A stretch of 64,000 nt of DNA from positions 131,520 through 195,519 of the forward strand of contig CDMY01000086.1 in the NCBI GenBank assembly GCA_001179505.1, given 5' to 3'. A program made the translations under genes and the position numbers. The notes below the pieces were generated by a model that was given only the letters and a program-made list of their open reading frames with translations, was not told where the DNA came from and did no database searches. This DNA is from Vitrella brassicaformis CCMP3155 (Eukaryota; Protista; Chromerida). Below are positions 26,504 through 54,763 of this stretch, piece by piece (positions within the stretch are counted from its first letter, which is position 1; every line of letters begins with the position of its first letter).

Positions 26504-27458
26504 GGGCCTCCCTAGCGGGCTTCCTTGCCGACGGGGTGGGTGGGTGTCGGTTGGGTTGAGCCAGCAGGGAGGGGGAGGTCGGTGGACGGGGGGATCGATG
26601 GTTGTTTCTATACGTGTGTGTGCAGCTAGCTGGCTGGGTGAAAGCGGTGCGCGCACGCACATGGGTATGATATGTCTCTCTTGGATGCTGAGAGGGCCGC
26701 TGCGTCCACATGCATTTGCTGTGGGTCGTATTTTTCTCTCACGAATGAGATATGTATGAGTGAGGTGTTGCATGCATGAATGGGTGTGGTGTTTTCGTAC
26801 CTATCCACTCGAGCGAGAGGCGCTTGTACATAGGCAAGCAATGGCGCCGGAGGGCAGACAGACAGACAGACATGAGGCACGTGCCTGCCTGGCTGAGCAC
26901 AGAACAGAGAAGACAGATCATGCTGGACAGCCAGGTAGCCATCCATCCATCCATCCATCCATTGATCCGTGCATCCATCTCTAACCTTTTTCGTCTCCAG
27001 CCTCATGCACACGCGGGGGTGCGGTGCGATCCGTCCTCCACTATGTATGTACATATGAAGCTCTTCTGCCTGACCGGCTGACTGAGTGAGTGAGTGTTGT
27101 GTTGTTGTGTGAATGTACCTACCTGGCAGGGTGCGCTGTGCTGTCTGCTGTCGTGTGCCGTTCCCGGCCTGGTTTTGGTCCGTCAGGGCGTTTTCGAATC
27201 GCACATGTGCCCCTTGTTTTCCAATGCTGGCTGGACGGGCCAAACCAGACCGAGCACAGACAGCAGACAGACACACGGGCCGGGAAGGAAATGGGTGTTC
27301 CAGTTGGTCGCGAGTGAGGTTGTTGGATGTGTGATCGACTGACTGACTCGCTAGGGCGTTAAACGCTGTCATTTTTCTTCCCATGTCTCTTTCGGAGACA
27401 TGGACGGCAAATTTTCCGAGGGGCTGACCCGGTCTTGCCTGGGGGGGTGGGGGGGGGG

Positions 27459-27758
27459 NNNNNNNNNNNNNNNNNNNNNNNNNNNNNNNNNNNNNNNNNN
27501 NNNNNNNNNNNNNNNNNNNNNNNNNNNNNNNNNNNNNNNNNNNNNNNNNNNNNNNNNNNNNNNNNNNNNNNNNNNNNNNNNNNNNNNNNNNNNNNNNNNN
27601 NNNNNNNNNNNNNNNNNNNNNNNNNNNNNNNNNNNNNNNNNNNNNNNNNNNNNNNNNNNNNNNNNNNNNNNNNNNNNNNNNNNNNNNNNNNNNNNNNNNN
27701 NNNNNNNNNNNNNNNNNNNNNNNNNNNNNNNNNNNNNNNNNNNNNNNNNNNNNNNNNN
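27459..27758. other. Assembly gap (about 300 N) flanked by poly-G runs
   Basis: Run of n's with G homopolymers on both sides. Confidence 0.98.
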
Positions 27759-28262
27759 GGGGGGGGGGGTGCGAGAGAGGTGTGGGTGCTGATGAATGGC
27801 TGGATGGATGGAAAGCATGGCTTCATTCACGCTGGATGTATGTGTGTACGTATGCGTGGTGGCCGTGCGTGTGCAATGTGACTCGCTATCGTCATGCATG
27901 TGGAGGGGAGTCTTGAGCGTGTCTGTGTGCTTCAGCCACTCGTGTAGAGACAGACACCGAAGCCGGCTGACTTGTGGCAGAGTGAATGAATGCGCCAAAC
28001 ATGACGTTTGAGGTACCACCTCTCGCGATAGGATTGTGTACACCGCTGCATTCGCGCCATGAGATGGCTGGTTGGTTGGTTGGTAGCGCCGGAAACGCAA
28101 CCCGACATCTTCTCTATCTATAGCACACACCAAACAGGCAACGTGCACACGTAGAGTGCCTCCACAAGGCATACGCCAAAAGAATGGGAGAAATCTTGCG
28201 AGCTAAATCTCACCTGCGAGGGTCCTTCCGGACGGAAGAGGACCAAAACTACGTCCCTCGCC

Positions 28263-33725: not shown

Positions 33726-36700
33726 TCAGCGGCGCCGCCGGTGGTTGGCAGAACGGGTATCCGTTGTACTTCCGGATGGATGGATCTTGACCATGAACGT
33801 CGATCGCTCACTTTGGATTTGTTTGGATTCAACTTCGATGTCATGGTATTCCAACGTCTCTTGGCCATCACTTGAGCTCTCAGCGCTGTCTTCGGGCTCC
33901 TGGAGCAGGGATACGCGCATATACAGTCATGGAGTCGATTGTTTGTTTCACCGGCGAATATACCTGTGTCGTGGCTGTGGGGTGGGGTGGGCTGGCGGCT
34001 TAGGCTTGGTCGCCGTCGACCTGGCCGCCTTCCTCTCCAGCTCAGCGGTGCTTGGGGGCGGGGGCGGGCGGTGGACAGGGATTCGCGACCGGTGTGGTGG
34101 TCTTGGGGTTGGAGCGACTGCTGGCGGCTGGCGGCAGGGTGCCTGGTGTCCGCTCTCCCACCGAGAACAGGGCGCGCCGCTGGAATCGTCATCGGACTGG
34201 TCGTTGGCAGCGGACAGGTCCTCGCCGAGGTTACGCAAGAGCACCCGCAATTCGCCCTCCACCTGCAAACACACACACACACACACACACATGCTCTGGA
34301 TGGAGGATGGGTGGATGGATTGTCTGGCTGATAGATGCATGCATACAGACATACATCAGTGTGTGTGCTGTCGTGTCAGTCTTGCTTTAAACGGCCCTGC
34401 TCCAGTCGTAGGCAGCGTTCATGATGCACATGAGCTCCACGGGCGCGGCGCGTCAAGGGACGTGAAGCGCTTGACGAGAGCACTCATCGCACACCACATG
34501 TCCCTGCCAGTGTCCATGAGACACGGACCCTACACAATGAGAGACACACATACACACATGGGCAGTGTGTGTGTATGTATGCGTGTCTGTCTGTCCGACT
34601 TACGTCTGTTCCCTTGTCATCCACCTGCAGCGCCCGAGTCCTTCCCTCTTGTGTATGCGGGTCCCTCTTGTCTATGCGATGACATGGGAACGGGAGCAGG
34701 CAAAGGCTGAACAGGGAGGGAGGGAGGGAGGGAGGCAGCCACACATTATCACTGGTCGATCGTATCGAGTCATCTGAGATGGCTTACATCCTCTCCGAGG
34801 CTGCTATCGAATCCGCCCCTTGAACGCACAGCAGCACCAACCATCGACGCACGCAAGTACAGCGTGTAAGTTCTCTCTTCCACACGGTGCCAGGCGGCGC
34901 TTAGCAGATCTCTCGGTCTCTCGGTGGCCGCCGAAGCGGCCAATTATGCGTAGACAGATAGACGAAAGATGAGAGACATGAGCACATTCATGATTACCTC
35001 CTTCGTGTCTGTCTCACTTACGTACCTGTGGGGCCGCCGGGGCGTCAATGCGGTCTATGTGCAGCGCCCGGGAGTTGAGTATAATGGGCCAAGAGATATA
35101 GAATGTAGACAGCCATCGGTCTGCACCACGCGCCACCTCTGCATTCAGTCTACCCGTACGGCAGAGAGAACGTTGAGGACACAGGAAGAACAACGAACAT
35201 TCATCCTGACACCCTGCTGCTCTCTTACCATTTCTGGCTCCGAATCTGTCTTTCTTGCTCAGGAGCTGGGCGTCCTTCTTGCTCAGGTCGGTCACATACT
35301 GCAAGCAACAAACAGACACATGTATGTATGTGTAATGTGAGTGTTCCGCCCGCATGTCTACCTGCCCGCGTACTCCCAGATCGGCCATGATGCCGGACTC
35401 CTGGGAGTTCGAGTGGTCGGGTACTTTCAGTTGCTCTATGGCCGGCCAATGGATGGCGAGTATGGCACCGATGACGTCGTCCTCGCTCCTGGTCGTCCTT
35501 GAGATGCCCTTCGAGAGCCTCCAGCTGCTCCAAGAGGACCAACTCAACCTGCGGACCACACACATATATAGACAGACAGACAGACAGACAGAAACAGGTG
35601 CATGTACACCCTCGCGCACATGGCGCGTGCCGTGCCGTGCCGCTCCTGCGCACCGTTGCGATCACCCCGAGTTGCTTGAACGACTCCGTGCCCTCCTGCT
35701 TGGATGAGGTAGCGGCGCACGCACTTGGAGAGGATGCCGAGCTCGTTTGCCAGCCCCTTGAATCGAGTCGGCGGCCGCGCCCCCAATGTTCACCTCCTTC
35801 TTTGTGCGATTGGGTGCATAGCATTTCCCGAAAGCCCTCTCGTCCTCGTTGTCTGTGCTTTCCTCGTTGTCGGTGATGGCTGTCTCGTTGCCCGCTGTCA
35901 TCGCACTGTCTGGCGGCGCACAGCCTACACACATTGACAGCGGTCATGTGTATTCGTGTGCATGTGTGTGTGTGCCTGTGCGGTTGGATGCCTACCTGGC
36001 ATACGTATTGAGCGTTTCTCGACGATCGTGCTGGGGACGTCATTGGCTTTGTAGAACAGTATGTATGCGTTTGGTCCTGGTAGAAGTGAGCACACCCCAG
36101 GCAGAACAATTAGCTTATTATATGTGCACGGGTGTATAGATCAGCACTTGTTTAGTTCTCTCTGACCTTGCAGGGCGTCTGGGTTGATGGCATGTTCGAT
36201 CTCCTCGTCGTTGAAATCCACCCACGTCGGATGGCCGCCCAAGGCTCTCTTGGCTTGTCTGTGGTGGTCATACAGACAGAGGAGGGATACAGAGACATGG
36301 ATGATGAACACTGCCGTTTTATGTTGCCGCTTATTGTCGCTTACGCTGTGTAGTGTCCTTCGTCCAGGGTGCCCTCCTGACTGGTCACTGCGTAGAGCTC
36401 GTAGACGCGGGCAGTGGTGGGGTCCTCTGTATGCATGACACACAACACCAGAGAGATCCATGAGTGTGTGATGCGATGCCCCTCATGTCATGCAGGCACA
36501 TACCGGATGCATCACACACGCCTGGGATGTCGCGCACACACAGGCCCTCCGAGGCGTCAAACGTGACGAAAGTGTCCAGCCGGTCGGACAGGCCTTCTCG
36601 CCGCTGGAAGCAATTAAGCGTCAGGATGAGGACCTCTGGCAGGCGCATGATGACTTTGCTGCCCCTGGCGTTGACGTGCCGCTGGCACGTGGGGCAGAAC

Positions 36701-38368
36701 CACTGACCGATGGGCTGATAAGAACGTCAGACAACACACATGGTAAGAACTTGATGCGTTGTTGTCTTGTTGGTCGCTCGCTTACCCTCTCGGCGCAGTA
36801 CTGTTCGAGCAGCTTCTTCACGCCGATTTCCTCTGTGTCGTCGGGCAGCGTCAGTGCGATACTCAGAAACTTCTCGAAATTGCGGGATACTGACCGACCG
36901 ACCGACAGATGAGTACAAGCACATGTCCATGTACGGTTGGCTTGGTCCACTCACCGTGTGGGCAGTGGGTGCACTGCATGATGCTCATGATCTGGCCCGC
37001 GACCGTGTCGAATATGAGTGAGTCCCCTCTCGCTGGACGCCAGAAAACGCACAGACAGGACACAGACAGACAGATGGCATGAATCGACGGCGCCGATGAA
37101 ACGGTTCGTCTCCTGAAGGCATATGGAAGAAAGAAAGAAACCGTCTAAGGTGTGCCGTATTGACACTCCACGCGCCCGAGGAAGTCCCCTGCATCCTCCT
37201 GCTAACGAGACAGACGACGCAGATCAATCGATCAATCAGAAGGCTAACTGCCTACCCACCTACCTGCAAGTTCTGGTATTGCCACTCACCCCCTTGCCTT
37301 CGAAGTCCCCGCTGCCTTCGAAGTCCCTCAACCTGTCTGCAAATTGACAATTGCAAGTTGAGCTCAGTGTGTACCTTTCCTTCGAAGATATATCTCGACG
37401 AATAAAAAAAGAAGGCAGCGATTTTGTGATCTCCGCTCAGAGAGAGAGAGAGAGAGAGATTCCAGGCAGGCAGGCAGATCGACCAATCAATCAACAAGAC
37501 GCGCTGCTTGCGTGCCTTATTTACTTACGTGCAGGTCTCCGTGCACCAGTCGTTCACGCTGCAACTTCTGCAGTGCGTCCAGAACATCACGAGCGATGCG
37601 AGCCATCTGTCCTGGGCTAGCGGCACCACAGTCGAGGTCCTTGAGCATCACTGCACGCCACACAGACCAGCCACACGCAAAGACAGATCAACCAAACCAA
37701 CATAGCGGGTGTGTGGGTGCCGTGGCTTGCTTAGTTACTGGGGATCCATTCCGTTTTGAATGCCCTTATTCTCTCCCCTGCCGCCCCTTTGAGGAGGTGG
37801 TACACGTCCTCGATGGCGATGACGTGCGGGAAGCCCTTCCTGGCCCGCTCGCACCGCGCCCGCCACTCGTCATTGCCCGTCCACATGAACCCGTCCACCT
37901 AAGCACACACAACACAGCACAACACAACACAATACAATACAATGCAATACTCACGCTCACATGAAATAGAGCAGAGCACGCATCGATGCGTGTGTTCGTT
38001 CGTTCATGCGCTCACTCACGCACGCCATACCACCACTTACCTCTTTGGCGCAGTCGTGGTTGTCGTTGAGTATCTTGATGCCCCGCCGGTCGCGCATGGC
38101 GACGACTACGCCAAAGCGGCCGCATCGCTGCCGCTCGCGGTGCTCGACCGTCAAGCCGTGGTTCTTCTCAAGGCAATGCTGCATTAATTGCATCATCACA
38201 CACACAAATTGGCAACATAGGAACACGTGTCAATTGGCACACGTCACAATCAAGCCAGCATGTCTGCCATGCCGTGCTCCTCACCAGTGCGATAGCGACT
38301 CTGCGGTTGCGCTTGGCCGTCTGCTCAGAGCCACCTCCCTCGCCCTGCAGGAATTGCAGTCGGTCCAT
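33726..38368 (-). CDS. Chimeric gene: N-terminal partial protein kinase (subdomains I-VIb) joined to a USP (peptidase C19) domain lacking the Cys box, plus a long C-terminal extension; 3' part below ~35000 uncertain
   Basis: Kinase: QRCGRFGVVVAMRDRRGIKIL, AKE, FPHVIAIEDVYHL, FKTEWIP and IARDVLDALQKLQRERLVHGDLH. USP: QQEDAGDFL, IFDTVAGQIMSIMQCTHC, FLSIAL, CPTC..RLPEVLILTLNCF, YELYAVTSQEGTLDEGHYTAYA, WVDFND and AYILFYK. Confidence 0.7.
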
Positions 38369-38526
38369 CAACCGACAAGCGCCGAAAGCGGCCGTGAGGA
38401 GCTATCGGTCATCATGACCCGGGTCCGAAGTTGTCACCGCGGTACTGATAGCCTGCGCACGTAAGTTGCCGACAGCACAGCAGGCTGTCTGGTGTTCGAA
38501 TACTGAACTGACTGCTCTTGCATCAT

Positions 38527-39213
38527 CTATATTCGCCCACCCTGTTGCTGCACTGGAGCCGGGTGTTGATGGCCTGGCACTGATGCCGGGTGTGGATATA
38601 TGCCTGCATTCACGCACGACACGGGCACAACCAGCCTTCTCGCACCAATGCGGCCATCCTGCCCGCTGTCTTGTCGCCTGCTCACCCATGCCTGGTGGCA
38701 TACCCATGCCTGTTGACATTCCGATGTGTGGGCACACATCAGCCGCAGGACAGAAGCGCGTCGCTTTGTGCGCATCCATCAGTGAGTGCTTGGCCTCACC
38801 TGGGTACACAGGTTGAGGGGCATAATGTGTCCTGAGCCCGAGCCTAAGCCGACAACGACACACACACAGGAATTCGTTGCAGGAGGCTGGAAGGGAGGAA
38901 ATACATACGTGCCACCAGGAACCCGACCCGATTCCATGTACCGTGTTGATAGTGATGGCGCGGAGGCTGTCCACCTTCCATGAGTGTCACCGACCTTCCT
39001 CTTCACTCTCAGCCACACCAAAATGGGACAGGGACCTTCTGCGTATTTGACGCCTTCAGCTCGGCCAGCATTTCCTGACACGCAGACCAACCGTATGTGG
39101 GAGGAGTATTATCTGTCGTTCACCTACCTTAAGCTTGGCAATCTGCTCCGTCAGCTGTTTGGTCTGTTCTTCGATCATTTCCACCTTCTTGGGCTCTCGG
39201 CACGGGACAGGAC

Positions 39214-39257
<44 letters not shown>

Positions 39258-39750
39258 GAGTCGATGGCCGCCAGCTGAAGGAAGGACAAGTACACACCAG
39301 ATGCATGCGATAAAGGAAGCAGGCAGGCGGGAGCTCGAGGTTCTGTACTCGAGAGCGGAGCCTGTCCGCGATGGCCGTCAGTTTAGCGATCTCTGTGCGG
39401 TTGTTGTTGTTGTTGTTGTTGTTGTGTAGTGTCTGCAGAAGGGCTGTCTTGTCCTCCGAGTTGTCCTCGTCCGCCTACAGGCACCCAAACGCATGCATTC
39501 GCGAGTACGCATAGAAATGAATCCGCATCCCATTCAGGAGCATCACAAATGGCAGGAGCATCACAAATGGCAGTGCCTTGTCGCATGGCATGTGCACGCC
39601 TCACCATTGCGGTGCTGCATAGGGCGTGCGGTCCGTCACATAGAAAGAAAGAAGGTCTGCCGATTCTTCTCCGTTTTTATTTTTGAAAATATGGAGAATT
39701 TTCGTCTCCGTCTCTTTCTCGACATCATTTCCCTTTGCGGGTGGGAAAGG
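38527..39750 (-). CDS. Hypothetical coiled-coil protein with poly-Asn and poly-Ser tracts (may be upstream exons of the kinase-USP gene)
   Basis: Exon-like segments with GT-AG borders: [44 protein letters not shown]...[18 protein letters not shown]|[10 protein letters not shown] and GMGMPPGMG. Confidence 0.45.
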
Positions 39751-39808: not shown

Positions 39809-40651
39809 ATGGCGGCCGTCAAAAGGAAACTTGAGGAGCAGATCTCGTCATTATCCCGACGTCTACCGCTTCGTGCGATGAGCAGCACCAGTGGCGTGTC
39901 GCCCTTTCACCACGCCGTGCCTGTTCATGATCTCGGAGCTGCGAGGGTGTTCTACGGCGACTTGCTGGGCTGCAGCGAAGGCAGAACCTCCCCAGGCAAA
40001 TGGATTGACTACAACCTGTGAGCAATGCCGCAACAACACAGACGGGCCCTGTTGATTTCTACGAATCTCCGTCAGGTATGGCAGTCAGCTTGTTTGCCAT
40101 TTTGTTGGTGAGAGCTACAGAGCGCCTGAATATGTCAACCCCGTCGGTATGCCCACCTGCACTGAAGTTGTTAGTGTCGCACACACACACTTGTGGTCGA
40201 TTGATGCGCAAAGATGGCGATGAGGTGCCCGTCCCGCATTTCGGGTGTGCGCTGAGTGTCGATGAGTTCCATACTCTCGCGGCCAGGCTCAAAGAGAAGG
40301 GTGTCCGGTTCGTCATTGAACCACACCGGAGGTTCCAAGGGCAGCCAGGTGTGTGGCGCAGCCGATGGAGAGGAGAGGGCAGATGCCATACTGCCTCTAT
40401 GTATGTCATTGTGTGTGGGTTGGCGCAAGGTGACCAGTGGACCATGTTCTTCAAAGACCCATCAAACAACGCGCTGGAATTCAAAGCCATGGTACCTGGA
40501 TGGGTGCGTGGGTGGGAGGGATTGGTGGGGAGGCGAGTGTCATCTATCGTTGAGTGCTATGACTGCTCTGTCTGTCTCTGTGGGCGACGTTCAGGTGCAT
40601 CCTGAGAATCTGTTTGCTAAGTACAATGTGGACGATTTCGCTGACAAGTGA
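39809..40651 (+). CDS. VOC/glyoxalase/bleomycin-resistance family protein (COG3565-like), multi-exon
   Basis: [95 protein letters not shown]. The ~25-aa basic N-terminal extension may be a targeting peptide. Confidence 0.88.
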
Positions 40652-45323: not shown

Positions 45324-45613
45324 ATGCAATCCAACCCACCGTCTGCCAGCTCGTCGGTGCCACCCCCTCGCCCTCCCCCTCCCCCTCCCCCTCCCCTAGC
45401 GCTCCCCAACAACCCCCGCCCTGCGACGCGGCCCTTAGCGCTCCACCGGTCGGTGTATGTGTGGGAGGATGAGTGCGACGAGATGGTGCAGCCGGCATCG
45501 CACACACAGCCAGTGCCGCCACAGCTACAGTACAGACCGCCCCGACCTCACCGCTCTGCAGAGGCCCACGGGGAACGACGCGATCTAGATGAACTCATGA
45601 GAAGGTGCGCCTA

Positions 45614-45654
<41 letters not shown>

Positions 45655-48600
45655 CACACACACACACACACACACGTACATCCAAGGCAACACAACACAT
45701 GGATGGATGGATGATGGATGCCTTCCGTGTTTTGTTGTTCCTTTGGCAGTTTGGACGAGCTGGACGGCGGCCAGCCTTTCGGTGCGCCTGCAGCCCCCCT
45801 GCCGTTCATGAGTGAGCAGATGATGACGGTGAAGTTGGAGGCCTCAGCTGGCGTGACCAGCCCCCCCTACTCCCAATGGCTGCTCCCGCGAATCGACGAG
45901 GAGCCGCCACACCTGCCGCCACACCTGCCATTCCACCCACATCAGCACGCGGCTGCAAACGGCGGAGCGCAGCTTGAACCCCCACATGAGCAGCCTGCCG
46001 CTGCAGCCGCTGCTGGGAGTGACATGGTGGTGGATGGGCCACTGGAGGGCCAGAAGCAGCACCCGGCCGCATCTCGCGACACTCTCATCCTCAAGTCGGC
46101 TGGCTGTTTCGAAGTCAAGAGGTCGGTGACTGCACAGCCACAGCCGTCCAGCGCAGACGACGGGTCGCGCAGTGCAGCGGATAAGGCGGGTCCGGGTGAT
46201 GGGGGAGATAGCGGGGCAGTGGGGGAGGTGGCGAGGTTTGTGGATGCGGCCGGCCGTTCGGTGGACCCAGGCATCGAGGACGTGTACGTGCCTCTGGTGC
46301 CCATGACCTCCCCAGCAGACGACAGCCATGCCAACACCGACCGTGGGGAGCGGCGTGAGGCGAGCGGGCACTACCTGTTCTGCAAGGAGTATCAGCAGGG
46401 GTGTGAGGGCTGCCCGGGATGCTACCTAGCACCCGGAGTGGGCGTAGGCGTGGGTGTGGATGTGGGAGCCGCCCACCCCCCCTACTGTCCATACCCATCA
46501 GTCAATAGCGAGAAGTCCCTCCCGTTGCTCAACCCACTGGTGGCACATCGGCTGTGGGCAGGGCCGGGGGGCGAGGGCGACGTCAGCTCATCCGACGAAG
46601 GCCGCAAGGACTCAGACATGCCGCCCCCCAGCCTCCTGCACGTGTGCCGCAACTTCCAGCAGCCCCCTCCACTCGCACACCCACATGGGCATGCCCCCCG
46701 GAAGCACAAGGCCCGTTCCAAGAGCGGCAAGCCGAAGGTCAAGCGCGAGATGGAGCTGGAGGACCCCGTAGAGATCAGTGGCGATCTGATCGAGGCCAAG
46801 GCGCGTCATGCAGCAGAAATGGCCCGGCGGCTGCAGGCGAGAGAGCACGACGAGAGTGCCCTTCTGATGGGTGCTGTCAAGGAGGAGGCAGTAGAGGGGG
46901 CGATGGGTGATAAGGGCAGGGCTGGGCAGCGCACACGGCGCAAGAGTAAGAGGGCAGTGGCCGAGGGGGACGAGTGGGCGGTGGAGGGAGGAGGACCAAA
47001 CGCCATACAGCAGGTCAGCGATCACCCACAGGCAAACGAAAGGAAACACAGCCAGATGGATGCACATGTGTGTATGTGTGTTTGTGTGTGTTTGTCGCCT
47101 GTTCAGATGTATCATTCCCTGGGTCTGCACCGCAGCGAGACCACCGACACCTCTGCAGACCCTCTAGCCGACCACCATCAGCAGCAGGTGATAGCCTACG
47201 GCCGTCCCCCCCAGCCCCATGACCCCGCCGGCTGGCTGGCCGAGGGGGGCTGGGACGGCGGACCAGGGCTGGCCTACGGCCGAAACCGTTGGGGACTGGG
47301 AAAGGCCAGCAACAGTCTGTGTGGCGTGGGTGGGGGGGGCAAGGATCCCTTCCGCACGGACAGTGAGGGTGCATTGGTGCAGAAGAAGCCGAAGAAGCCG
47401 CGGGCCAAGATGAGCAGGGACGCATCGGGCATGAGATTCCAACTCGGTGGGTGATTGTTGCAAGGGGAAAGAAAGGCTCCTGCTGGAGGGTCGTGGGTAG
47501 GGGGGGTGCGATGGGTGTCTGGTGTCTGGTGTGTTGTGTTGGCACCAGGTGAGGCTGGTAGGAACGAGCTCAAGAGGAGGATTAGCCAGAAACTCAAGGA
47601 GGAACCCCACTGGAAGGCTATCATGTGAGCTGAGCGTATTACATGGCCGCACTGCAGCCATGACACACAGACAAAAGGACAATACTCATCCCGCTCTGTC
47701 TATGCCCGTGCGTGTGTGCGTGTTCAGTCCGACGGGTCAGATCAAGTTGGCGACCATCACCAAACTGCTAGAAATGGCTGAGGTGGGGAGGGATGGACCA
47801 CACACAAAGAAAACCACACTCAGACAGACAGACAGACAGATGCTTTGCGTTGCGGTGCATGGCTGCATTCATTCTTCATGCATATATCTACTCATCCACT
47901 CATCCCCCCCTGCATACTGATCAGACGTTGGGTTTGACTGGTGAGGTGCATCGCATCTACTCGCGGCGCTGCAGGGAGACACAAGGACCCCCGCAGCCAC
48001 CCAAGCCGCGCAGGCAAGGACTCCAACCACACGCACCGCCCAGACAGACGCACGGCCCTCACCGGCCACTTCTGTCTGATGGATGACACACGCACATTTG
48101 CTCTGCAGGTCCAGTAGGGACCGTGTGAAGTCCCCGTTGCTGCCGAGCAGCCAGGCGGCCCTGCATCCCCTGCACCCCCTGGTGTCGCTCCTCCAGTGTG
48201 ACGACAACATATCCGATGACACCTCACAGCCGTCCATCGCCACCACCCTCCCCAAGCGACGCAAATTCGACATTACCGAGTGCATGGCCGCTGACATGGG
48301 CGATGAGATGGACGAACTGCAGCAGCCCATGGGTGGGGGGAAGGAGACGGCCGGGGCGGCACACAGCCAATTCCACTCCGCCAGCAAGGTGAGACTCATC
48401 AACGGGGGGGGAGGCGCTGATTGATTGATGGACTGACTGATGCACTGTTTGGTGTAGGATGAGGAGGATCCATATGGTGCGTACTACGCTGCCGGTGCCG
48501 CTGCAGCGGCTGCCGCATGTGGGGTGGCGCCGCCCCCCATGCCCCAGCCCATCCACCCCGACCCACGGCCGCTGATCTTCATCCCTCGGCGCAAGGACGT

Positions 48601-48838
48601 GGGCGGCACCAACATAGACCATGATGCCAAGGAGGGGACGGACAGCCACCAGCCACAGACAGCAGCGGCACCAGCAGCAGCAGCAGCGGCAGCTGATGGT
48701 GGTGGTGGTGGCGATGGGGGCGGCATGTGTGATGGGGATGGTGAGGGGATGGAGACGGCAGACGACCATGACAGCCACGGTGTGCCTGCAGAGCCGGCGG
48801 GGCCGCCCCCTGGGCTCTCGCAGGAGGGGAAGCAGTAG
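45324..48838 (+). CDS. Large hypothetical low-complexity protein with Cys motifs, NLS-like basic clusters and a small helical domain
   Basis: Long ORF 45718-47454 plus phase-compatible exons GEAGRNELKRRISQKLKEEPHWKAI|IPTGQIKLATITKLLEMAE|TLGLTGEVHRIYSRR, ending ..QEGKQ* at 48838. Confidence 0.6.
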
Positions 48839-53605: not shown

Positions 53606-54763
53606 TCACTGCTGCTTACAGCTGTCGGGATCCCCCGTGTGGTCCCTCGGCTGCCTTGCTGCCGCACCCTCACCCCCACTGTGCACGTACCCGCCGCCCT
53701 CCGCCCCTTCATGTGCCTCACTGGCGGCATCCTCGTTGACACCCAGCGCCTCTATGAGGCTCTGCACCTCGCTGTCGTGCACGTCGCCCTGCGCCAGCTT
53801 GCTCAGCACCGACGGCGTCAGCCGGCTGCTCTCCAAAGCTGAGCCGTCAAACCCAAAGAACCGTAGGAACTCCGCAAACCCCCGGGCATCTTCCTCTGTG
53901 AAGTTTGAAGGCTGGCTGCTGTGTGTGGATGGCCTGTGCGCCGCTGTAGGGTGCGGCTGGTGTGGGTGCGGGTGAGAGAGGTGGTCGAGAGCACCTGGCC
54001 CGCCGAGGTCTCGCATCACCTCCTCAGGTGGCTTGCCGAACTCCTGCAGCTGCACCAGCAGCTCCTGGATCCTCAGAGTCGTGGGCGAGGGGTCGGTCGA
54101 TGAAGCTCCCGTGGTGCTGGTGGCCTTGCTCTCCTGTTCCTCCTGGTCGAAGAGGGCCACCACCTGCCGATAGATGGACACCTGCCGCTCGTAACGCCCC
54201 AGGTCCTCCTCAGATATCACTTGGTCGTCCGACCCGCCCTCGTCCCTCTTTTGCCTCTGGGCATCCAGCCATGGCTCGAATCGCGACAAGACCTGCCGCA
54301 TGGGCTCATGCAGCACATCACGCGAGAATACGCCCTCCAGCAGCTCGTCCAATGCCTTCTCGAAATCGCCATCATTCAGCAGCCCGCCCCCCGACAGTGG
54401 CACGTCTGCTGCCGACTCTGGCCTCCTCTCCTCCTTGTCGAGCTGCTCCAGCTCCGCCTTCATGTGACCGAGCGCCGACTCGATGTTGGCAGCGATGCCG
54501 CTGCTGGCGGTATTACCGCTGCTGGGTGGGGGATCAGCACGCGGTGGCCGGTAGGGTGAGGAGGGGGCTGGCGACGTGCGGGCTGCTGACTCGTTGACGC
54601 GTGGCGGTGGTGTGGCAGCTGCGGGAGGGGGGGAAGAGGGGGAAGGTGGCTGCTTGGGAGGTGCGCTTGACGCCGATGCGGCTGAAGGTGGTGCATCTTG
54701 CTGCGGCCTTGGCTGTGCTGCGTCCGAGAGTTCCTCGAGGGTCTCCTTCAGAAGGTCATCCAT
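53606..54763 (-). CDS. PEX19: Peroxin 19 (peroxisomal membrane protein chaperone/import receptor), apparently intronless
   Basis: N-terminal MDDLLKETLEEL. Core LDELLEGVFSRDVLHEPMRQVLSRFEPWL..EEDLGRYERQ..IQELLVQLQEFGKPPEEVM. C-terminal CaaX CKQQ*. Confidence 0.9.
   Translation of the reverse strand: MDDLLKETLEELSDAAQPRPQQDAPPSAASASSAPPKQPPSPSSPPPAAATPPPRVNESAARTSPAPSSPYRPPRADPPPSSGNTASSGIAANIESALGHMKAELEQLDKEERRPESAADVPLSGGGLLNDGDFEKALDELLEGVFSRDVLHEPMRQVLSRFEPWLDAQRQKRDEGGSDDQVISEEDLGRYERQVSIYRQVVALFDQEEQESKATSTTGASSTDPSPTTLRIQELLVQLQEFGKPPEEVMRDLGGPGALDHLSHPHPHQPHPTAAHRPSTHSSQPSNFTEEDARGFAEFLRFFGFDGSALESSRLTPSVLSKLAQGDVHDSEVQSLIEALGVNEDAASEAHEGAEGGGYVHSGGEGAAARQPRDHTGDPDSCKQQ

What the first reader, a model, noticed from the sequence alone, without database searches (positions are those of the whole stretch)
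36030..38368. In-frame half-kinase / half-USP chimera missing the catalytic halves of both
A clear kinase runs from the Gly loop (CGRFGVV), the Lys (GIK) and helix-C Glu to the catalytic loop HGDLH. I find no catalytic-loop Asn, DFG or APE after it. About 250 nt later a USP begins at the Gln box (QQEDAGDFL) and continues through the fingers, His box (GHYTAY), WVDFND and AYILFY. I found no Cys box (GxxNxGNTCY) anywhere. Phase-compatible splicing (HGDLH|ITKSLPSFFIRRDISSKE|RQVEG..QNLQ|QEDA) keeps the frame open. It could be a deletion-born chimeric gene, a double-pseudoenzyme ubiquitin-binding scaffold, or a mis-assembly.
Basis: partly seen in the sequence, partly recalled or inferred. Interest (0 to 1): 0.75.

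Follow-up and report, generated by a model that had tools for sequence, protein, structure and literature searches.

The report
Broken kinase-like/deubiquitinase fusion gene
In the alga Vitrella brassicaformis, one spliceable minus-strand gene joins the front two-thirds of a small kinase-like domain to a ubiquitin-removing enzyme that lacks its catalytic-cysteine segment; it is most likely a young gene wreck made by a deletion, or an assembly fault, not a new kind of enzyme.

Summary

- **Genome:** the window is Vitrella brassicaformis CCMP3155 scaffold CDMY01000086.1:131520-195519.
- **USP half (solid):** exons 37201-35996 carry the Q box, both CxxC zinc pairs, the His box, FND and AYILFY. 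The longest exon matches USP11, USP15 and USP4 structures at E 1e-5.
- **Kinase half (weak):** only the exon ending in HGDLH hits kinase models, all below threshold: APH and RIO1 at E 0.02, STK10 at 0.15, MAD6 at 0.078. It looks APH/RIO-like, not a classical protein kinase.
- **Join:** the two halves meet in 327 repeat-rich bases (37528-37202). The frame stays open whether or not a doubtful 141-base exon is included.
- **Flanks:** flanking exons keep strong codon bias (GC3 0.73-0.86) and their surviving catalytic residues, so the loss looks recent or artefactual.

Best reading: a deletion fused two genes, or one two-domain gene lost its middle. A falsely closed assembly gap is the main rival. 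Interest is low to moderate.

The parts
38285..38368 (-). Exon 1: ATG plus 28 codons, donor GTGAGG. An upstream acceptor at 38401 is also possible, so the true 5' end is not settled.
   Evidence: Sequence reading; GC3 0.71; no Pfam hit.
38041..38178 (-). Exon 2, 46 codons: Gly-loop-like CGRFGVV and candidate beta-3 Lys (GIK).
   Evidence: AG acceptor and GTAAGT donor, phase 0 at both ends; GC3 0.85; no family or PDB hit.
37739..37898 (-). Exon 3, 53 codons plus 1 base: candidate helix C and beta 4-5 (..EWRARCERARKGFPHVIAIED..).
   Evidence: Splice sites and phase; GC3 0.85; no kinase hit.
37529..37650 (-). Exon 4: hinge, helix E and catalytic loop up to LVHGDLH, followed by a GTAAGT donor.
   Evidence: APH PF01636 and RIO1 PF01163 at E 0.02; STK10 alignment across helix D/E and HRDL, E 0.15; MAD6 kinase at 0.078.
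37202..37528 (-). Junction zone of 327 repeat-rich bases. It contains: (a) VSN..LLIDWS at 37524-37480, readable one base out of frame; (b) (CAGG)3.8 at 37463-37477 and (AG)10.5 at 37439-37459; (c) a doubtful exon 5 at 37430-37290, built from three copies of a TTCGAAGG 18-mer; (d) a GATTGAT-type 20-mer present twice.
   Evidence: GC3 of exon 5 is 0.51, like the introns; no Pfam, NCBIfam or PDB hit.
37165..37201 (-). Exon 6: USP Q box (QEDAGDFLGRVE). The only in-phase donor is a weak GTCAAT. An in-frame TAG lies at 37147-37145.
   Evidence: Regex hit; sequence; GC3 0.83.
36955..37032 (-). Exon 7: DSLIFDTVAGQ..CTHC, the first zinc-ribbon CxxC of the USP fingers.
   Evidence: Same pattern as the full USP domains of P0008; phase arithmetic; GC3 0.84.
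36786..36889 (-). Exon 8: USP fingers segment (..FLSIALTLP..LLEQYCAER).
   Evidence: Splice sites and phase; GC3 0.79.
36504..36714 (-). Exon 9: second CxxC (WFCPTC) and the LPEVLILTLNCF strand of the USP palm and fingers.
   Evidence: PDB USP11, USP15 and USP4 at E 1e-5 to 2e-5; tblastn with six USP proteins at 1e-4 to 3e-10; Pfam UCH and UCH_1 weak.
36345..36426 (-). Exon 10: VYELYAV..GHYTA, the His box with the catalytic His.
   Evidence: Pfam UCH at E 1.8e-4, 21.6 bits against a 23.9 cutoff; tblastn.
36167..36258 (-). Exon 11: TWVDFNDEEI, the box that carries the third catalytic residue (Asp/Asn).
   Evidence: Sequence reading; GC3 0.73.
35996..36076 (-). Exon 12: AYILFYK, the end of the USP core.
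   Evidence: tblastn to USP C-termini; splice sites.
35665..35909 (-). Possible last exon (acidic, then basic tail). Weak coding signal. A phase-compatible GTGATC donor at its end could lead to a further exon near 35559-35350.
   Evidence: GC3 0.63; strong three-base periodicity at 35345-35555, strand ambiguous.

Best explanation
The locus is what remains after the DNA between a small APH/RIO-type kinase-like coding region and a USP4/11/15-like deubiquitinase coding region was lost. Before the loss these were either two tandem genes or one two-domain gene. The breakpoints lie in intron-like, microsatellite-rich DNA (37528-37202). The GTAAGT donor after HGDLH can therefore splice in frame to the next USP exon, giving an open frame of about 477 to 524 codons.

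The product would hold a kinase-like N-lobe plus helix E and HGD, but no usable Asn or metal loop and no C-lobe core. It would hold a USP with fingers, palm, His and Asp boxes, but no Cys-box helix and little of the helix after the Q box. It cannot be an active kinase or an active deubiquitinase, and it probably does not fold well. I read it as a young chimeric pseudogene, or at best a young chimeric transcript without enzymatic function.

Shown here: the motifs, the phases, the absence of the missing parts from the window, and the identity of the USP half. Inferred: the kinase identity, the deletion itself, its recency, and the lack of function.
For: - All exons have GT-AG sites and compatible phases with no internal stop, and both the E4-E5-E6 and E4-E6 paths are in frame.
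- The USP identity is solid.
- Four independent kinase models align to exon 4 at the helix E and catalytic-loop position.
- No Cys box occurs in six frames of the 64 kb, and there is no UCH hit on upstream open frames.
- All irregularities cluster in about 500 bases, 37530-37030. They are three microsatellites, the 18-mer in three copies, a duplicated 20-mer, a doubtful exon with GC3 0.51, a weak GTCAAT donor and an in-frame TAG.
- About 1,400 bases of flanking exons carry no lesion and keep GC3 of 0.73-0.86, plus Gly loop, Lys, HGD, both CxxC pairs, GHY and FND. That pattern fits one recent local event.
- Velvet contigs built with k = 75 (PMC4501334) should read through repeats of 21 and 15 bases, which favours a real junction if this stretch lies inside a contig.
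Against: - The junction is therefore unverified, and expression and splicing are unknown.
- No intact relative of either half was found to show the ancestral state.
- No close paralogue of the USP exists in the protein library. A break would then mean loss of a single-copy gene, which is rarer than the decay of a duplicate.
- The kinase assignment rests on sub-threshold hits to one exon.
- The out-of-frame Asn..IDW 'relic' overlaps a motif that is repeated 255 bases away, so it may be chance.
Confidence: 0.45

Rival explanations
1. Assembly artefact. A gap in the draft assembly was closed falsely inside the (CT)n/(CCTG)n block, hiding several hundred bases to about 1 kb. In the living alga the gene would then be an intact two-domain protein, with a complete APH/RIO-like kinase followed by a complete USP.
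For: - The assembly used velvet, SSPACE, GapFiller and IMAGE for gap closing, and 80% of the reads were bacterial (PMC4501334).
- The window carries an N gap elsewhere.
- The junction coincides with microsatellites.
- Both flanks look like healthy, codon-biased, lesion-free coding sequence with their catalytic residues kept.
- No intact paralogue exists that could make this a redundant copy.
- Earlier notes of this scan report other assembly faults in this genome (not tested here).
Against: - The repeats are only 15 and 21 bases, far shorter than k = 75.
- From my own knowledge of the tools, gap closers check the closed length against the estimated gap, so hiding 0.6 kb or more is uncommon.
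- This reading needs a kinase-USP fusion, an architecture I did not find elsewhere.
- It does not by itself explain the weak donor and the truncated helix between exons 6 and 7.
Confidence: 0.25
2. Functional chimeric protein. The fused frame is expressed and kept by selection as a non-catalytic ubiquitin-binding or scaffold protein.
For: The reading frame is open over about 1.5 kb with consistent phases, and the flanking exons have high GC3. USP-fold proteins without a catalytic Cys exist: the PAN2 UCH domain pairs with the PAN3 pseudokinase (PMC4158885).
Against: - Both folds are cut through core elements. The kinase lacks everything after the catalytic loop. The USP lacks the Cys-box helix and most of the next helix.
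- Catalytic His, Asp, Lys and HGD are all retained, which a recent break explains directly.
- No orthologue with this architecture was found.
- Known pseudo-USPs keep a complete fold.
Confidence: 0.12
3. No kinase at all. Exons 1-4 are the divergent N-terminal part of a Cys-less USP, and HGDLH followed by QEDAGDFL is simply the USP 'F.G..QQDA.EFL' motif split by an intron.
For: HGDLH joins QEDAGDFL in phase. 'ALHCL' across the exon 1-2 junction resembles the LQCL that follows a Cys box. Exons 2 and 3 have no kinase hit.
Against: - Exon 4 hits four kinase models and no UCH model.
- Gly loop, Lys, a helix-C-like segment, the hinge and HGD come in kinase order and spacing.
- The catalytic Cys position would be Arg, and the distance from 'LHCL' to the Q box would be about 150 residues.
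- This could not be tested on a joined model (left out by rule).
Confidence: 0.1
4. Two separate genes. A short kinase-like gene ends at the TAA three codons after HGDLH, and an independent USP gene starts downstream.
For: If the GTAAGT donor is not used, the frame stops at 37519-37517.
Against: The USP part has no start codon of its own: there is a stop just before 37436 in its frame and no Met before exon 7. Only about 90 to 330 bases separate the two parts, which leaves no room for a terminator and a promoter. The donor is a perfect consensus.
Confidence: 0.05

Closest known systems
USP4/USP11/USP15-type ubiquitin-specific proteases (peptidase family C19, Pfam UCH PF00443)
   Same: Q box, two CxxC zinc-ribbon pairs, the WFCPxC..LPxVLxxxLxxF segment, His box GHYTA, FND box and AYILFY end. 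The best PDB matches are USP11 8oyp, USP15 6gh9 and USP4 2y6e.
   Different: There is no Cys box, so no catalytic Cys, no oxyanion Asn and no first thumb helix. The helix after the Q box is cut short. No DUSP or UBL domains are present. The best library hits are only 32-50% identical over about 50 residues.
APH (PF01636) and RIO1 (PF01163) families of the protein-kinase-like clan
   Same: An HGDL-type catalytic loop preceded by a helix-E-like segment, matched at profile positions 140-177 of 239 (APH) and 93-131 of 187 (RIO1). The upstream exons carry Gly-loop-like and Lys motifs and a 'GFPHV' segment after a helix-C-like stretch.
   Different: All scores are below the family cutoffs (15 bits against 22-23). 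The Asn and the metal-binding Asp are readable only out of frame. Everything after them is absent.
PAN2 (inactive UCH-like domain) with PAN3 (pseudokinase)
   Same: A Cys-less USP fold and a kinase-like fold work together without either catalytic activity (PMC4158885).
   Different: They are two separate, complete, well-folded proteins with WD40 and exonuclease partners. Here there are two incomplete domains on one chain and no detected sequence relationship. The resemblance is in composition only.
Chimeric genes and pseudogenes born by deletion between neighbouring genes (for example Drosophila Sdic; recalled from memory, not checked here)
   Same: Loss of intergenic and terminal coding DNA joins the 5' part of one gene to the 3' part of the next, and splicing across the scar keeps the frame.
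   Different: The ancestral two-gene state has not been seen for this locus, and expression is unknown.

Membership tests
USP / peptidase C19 (Pfam UCH) | Cys box (G-x-x-N-x-G-N-T-C-Y/F) with the catalytic Cys | tested here: not met
   No match to three regular expressions in six frames of the 64 kb. No UCH hit on exons 1-5 or on nine upstream minus-strand open frames. A box split by an intron could escape these tests.
USP / peptidase C19 (Pfam UCH) | Q box (QQDA-x-EF-L) | tested here: met
   QEDAGDFL at 37201-37178, the only Q-box match in the window.
USP / peptidase C19 (Pfam UCH) | His box with the catalytic His, and the Asp/Asn box | tested here: met
   GHYTA at 36358-36344. WVDFNDEEI in exon 36258-36167.
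USP / peptidase C19 (Pfam UCH) | Score above the Pfam gathering threshold | tested here: inconclusive
   The per-exon scores were 21.6 and 13 bits against a cutoff of 23.9. The joined product was not scanned (left out by rule). The PDB hits at E 1e-5 leave no doubt about homology.
Protein-kinase-like superfamily (APH/RIO type) | Catalytic loop H-x-D-x-x-x-x-N | tested here: not met
   HGDLH is in frame, but no H-x-D-x(4)-N match exists in any frame. The Asn is reached only by skipping one base at 37522-37520.
Protein-kinase-like superfamily (APH/RIO type) | Metal-binding Asp (DFG or IDW-type) and the C-lobe after it | tested here: not met
   LLIDWS occurs only in the shifted frame and overlaps a repeated 20-mer. 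No open frame after it hits any kinase model.
Protein-kinase-like superfamily (APH/RIO type) | Gly-rich loop and beta-3 Lys in the N-lobe | tested here: inconclusive
   CGRFGVV and GIK are present at plausible spacing, but exon 2 has no hit in Pfam, NCBIfam, PDB or the Atlas.
Protein-kinase-like superfamily (APH/RIO type) | Score above a family threshold | tested here: not met
   APH scored 15.1 bits against 23.2, and RIO1 15.0 against 22. MAD6 scored 11.5 against 460.

The most novel reading that the evidence does not exclude
The assembly hides the middle of the gene, and the living alga makes one intact protein that couples a complete APH/RIO-like kinase to a complete USP deubiquitinase. I did not find that pairing in any search here. 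A lesser variant is that the truncated chimera itself is expressed and kept as a ubiquitin-binding pseudoenzyme.
Probability: 0.2. Interest if true: 0.6.

Novelty: new member of a known kind. Interest (0 to 1): 0.25.

Why it matters
If the junction is real, this is a clean, datable example of how a deletion between neighbouring coding regions makes an in-frame chimeric gene in a chromerid alga. It also warns that automatic gene models can hide such wrecks behind plausible introns.

If the junction is an artefact, the true gene would be a kinase-like/deubiquitinase fusion worth a closer look, and the public scaffold needs correction at this site. In both cases the locus should not be counted as an active kinase or an active USP in inventories of chromerid and apicomplexan signalling genes.

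Tried and rejected
- **Reads:** There is no read or RNA evidence.
- **Word search:** the USP exon found nothing in the allowed length range.
- **Whole-library HMMER, USP exon:** the two top hits (P0001, P0002) are translations of tandem repeats, hence spurious. The rest are generic USP C-terminal fragments. No orthologue or close paralogue appeared.
- **Blank hits are not evidence about annotation:** the window's own proteins did not appear in the searches of two neighbouring genes either. The lack of a self-hit therefore says nothing about annotation or expression.
- **Metagenome scan, exon 3:** one locus, a bacterial contig, shares an identical 12-residue stretch inside a 564-residue open frame. 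No other exon matched, and 5 of the 36 bases differ. I took it as chance.
- **Atlas feature searches** of exons 2 and 3 were uninformative.
- **PDB searches** of exons 2, 3, 5 and 7 and of the shifted frame found nothing useful.
- **Public gene calls:** a paralogue (P0022) led to a different scaffold. The exact Pex19 look-up identified the scaffold but reaches only to window 43606. An ORF guess at the locus was not on record.
- **Kinase 'relic':** I first took VSN..LLIDWS as strong proof that the kinase exon once continued. I downgraded it after finding the same GATTGAT-type 20-mer in the next intron.
- **Bacterial promoter and terminator scan** was irrelevant for a eukaryote.
- **Left out by rule:** the joined (spliced) protein was not searched, scanned or folded.
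Full report
**Where the window comes from.** Earlier notes of this scan named the alga Vitrella brassicaformis. I tested this. A single-exon open frame at 53609-54763 (minus strand) translates exactly to a 385-residue Pex19 product on NCBI record GCA_001179505.1 CDMY01000086.1. The fetched 20,395 bases are 100% identical to window 43606-64000. The window is therefore CDMY01000086.1:131520-195519 of strain CCMP3155. That assembly was built from Illumina reads with velvet (k = 75), SSPACE, GapFiller, IMAGE, ICORN and REAPR (PMC4501334).

**The observation.** The gene lies on the minus strand. From the sequence, marker positions and boundary checks, I derive these exons:

| Exon | Window coordinates | Main content |
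|---|---|---|
| E1 | 38368-38285 | Start codon, 28 codons |
| E2 | 38178-38041 | CGRFGVV, GIK |
| E3 | 37898-37739 | Helix-C-like segment |
| E4 | 37650-37529 | Ends LVHGDLH, then GTAAGT |
| E5 (candidate) | 37430-37290 | Repeat-built, doubtful |
| E6 | 37201-37165 | QEDAGDFLGRVE |
| E7 | 37032-36955 | First CxxC |
| E8 | 36889-36786 | Fingers segment |
| E9 | 36714-36504 | Second CxxC |
| E10 | 36426-36345 | GHYTA |
| E11 | 36258-36167 | WVDFNDEEI |
| E12 | 36076-35996 | AYILFYK |
| E13 (possible) | 35909-35665 | Tail, doubtful |

All introns are GT-AG and 65-142 bases long. The phases add up, and none of the seven split codons is a stop. Both E4-E5-E6 and E4-E6 are in frame. 'GHYTAY' is really GHYTA followed by A-Q-A-K.

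**The USP half is real.**
- E9 matches USP11, USP15 and USP4 catalytic domains in the PDB at E 1e-5 to 2e-5.
- E9 matches six USP proteins by tblastn at 1e-4 to 3e-10.
- E10 hits Pfam UCH at E 1.8e-4.
- Both zinc-ribbon CxxC pairs, the catalytic His, the FND box and the C-terminal AYILFY are present.
- The whole-library HMMER search with E9 found only generic USP fragments, 32-50% identical over about 50 residues. Its two top hits are spurious tandem-repeat translations. This USP lineage therefore has no close relative in that library.

**The Cys box is absent.** Three regular expressions found none in six frames of the 64 kb. Pfam found no UCH signal in E1-E5 or in nine minus-strand open frames up to 39906. 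The joined E6-E7 product also lacks most of the helix that follows the Q box in the complete USP domains of P0008. The only in-phase donor of E6 is a weak GTCAAT, and an in-frame TAG follows at 37147-37145.

Only E4 hits kinase models: APH and RIO1 (E 0.02, about 15 bits against cutoffs of 22-23), human STK10 across helix D/E and the HRDL loop (E 0.15), and the MAD6 kinase (E 0.078). E2 and E3 hit nothing in Pfam, NCBIfam, the PDB or the Atlas. The order and spacing run Gly-loop-like motif, Lys, helix-C-like segment followed by GFPHV, hinge, helix E, HGD. This fits a small APH/RIO/Bud32-type kinase fold, a judgement from my general knowledge of these families. I put about 70% on that fold.

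**A possible relic after HGDLH.** Skipping one base of the A run at 37522-37520 gives VSN, then eleven residues on, LLIDWS. These would be the catalytic-loop Asn and the DFG-equivalent of such kinases. The pattern (two aliphatic residues, D, an aromatic, then G/S/E/T) occurs only twice in the whole six-frame translation. However, the DNA encoding LLIDWS belongs to a GATTGAT-type 20-mer that recurs 255 bases away in the next intron. The motif is locally enriched. I treat the 'relic' as probable, not proven.

**The junction.** Between HGDLH and QEDA lie 327 bases (37528-37202) made largely of short repeats:
- (CAGG)3.8 and (AG)10.5;
- three copies of a TTCGAAGG 18-mer, which make up most of candidate exon 5;
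- the duplicated 20-mer.

Exon 5 has GC3 of 0.51, like the introns (0.44-0.57 GC). E2, E3 and E6-E11 have GC3 of 0.73-0.86. Every irregularity of the locus sits within about 500 bases (37530-37030). About 1,400 bases of flanking exons carry no lesion and keep their catalytic or metal-binding residues.

**Interpretation.** A kinase fold cut just after the catalytic loop cannot be an active enzyme, and neither can a USP without its Cys-box helix. A stable fold is doubtful for both. Intact flanks around one damaged patch point to a single recent local event. That event is either a genomic deletion whose ends lie in intron-like DNA (best explanation, 0.45) or a falsely closed assembly gap (0.25).
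- For a real junction: the repeats (15 and 21 bases) are much shorter than the assembler's k of 75.
- For an artefact: gap closers were used, the junction sits in microsatellites, and no paralogue exists that would make the loss harmless.
- Other readings: a selected non-catalytic chimera (0.12), a USP with a novel N-terminus and no kinase at all (0.10), and two separate genes (0.05). The last is disfavoured because the USP part has no start codon and no room for a promoter.

**What could not be done.** The spliced model was searched exon by exon only. Searching, scanning or folding the joined product was left out. The public gene model at this locus could not be retrieved. The look-ups reached only to window 43606, or led to a paralogue on scaffold CDMY01000377.1. 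The window's own proteins did not show up in the searches of two neighbouring genes, so the missing self-hit carries no weight.

**Verdict.** The 'clear kinase' claim and parts of the splicing are not. The locus is a truncated kinase-like/USP fusion as assembled. It is a known kind of event, a chimeric gene wreck or an assembly fault, and not a new enzyme class. Interest is low to moderate (0.25). It would rise if reads reveal an intact kinase-USP fusion.

Noticed in passing
window 37848-37883 (minus strand); L001:10001-10036: Exon 3 shares an identical 12-residue stretch (WTGNDEWRARCE) with a 564-residue open frame on a 68% GC bacterial metagenome contig (Ga0307510_10003680). That frame looked to me like a flavin-dependent halogenase or monooxygenase, which I did not check. 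Nothing else matches, and 5 of the 36 bases differ. I took it as chance.
   Followed up: yes
window 46030-47170; L002:10207-11606 (CDMY01000377.1): The long low-complexity gene at about 45324-48838 (921-residue public product) has a paralogue on another scaffold. The paralogue is 91-94% identical at DNA level over about 1.1 kb and gives a 595-residue product (P0022). An MMETSP transcript protein (P0023) also matched.
   Followed up: partly
window 53606-54763 (minus strand): A single-exon Pex19 gene. The open frame from the ATG at 54763 equals the 385-residue NCBI product exactly (PF04614). This fixed the window as CDMY01000086.1:131520-195519, with the window's end at the scaffold's end.
   Followed up: yes
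window 39012-39480 (minus strand): Three phase-compatible exons upstream of the finding encode a coiled-coil-like protein with an (AAC)n Asn run and a run of Ser codons (TRF reports (GCT)14 on the plus strand). It is unclear whether they form a separate gene or 5' exons of the kinase-like/USP gene; an AG acceptor at 38401 would allow the latter.
   Followed up: partly
window 35345-35555: A stretch with very strong three-base periodicity: GC is 0.80 at one codon position. It is open on both strands in the matching frames. On the minus strand it could be a further 3' exon of the USP gene, reached from a GTGATC donor at the end of exon 13.
   Followed up: partly
window about 27400-27830: An assembly gap (run of N) lies inside the window, which shows that this scaffold is not gap-free.
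   Followed up: no
window 39809-40600 (plus strand): A glyoxalase/extradiol-dioxygenase-type (PF00903) gene runs divergently from the region upstream of the finding. Its first exon is 62-76% identical to short proteins that carry PF00903; two of them are named extradiol dioxygenase family proteins by JGI.
   Followed up: partly
P0001, P0002, P0003, P0005: The protein library holds long 'proteins' that are translations of tandem DNA repeats. They collect many weak matches and can top a phmmer list with misleading E-values (2.7e-35 here).
   Followed up: yes
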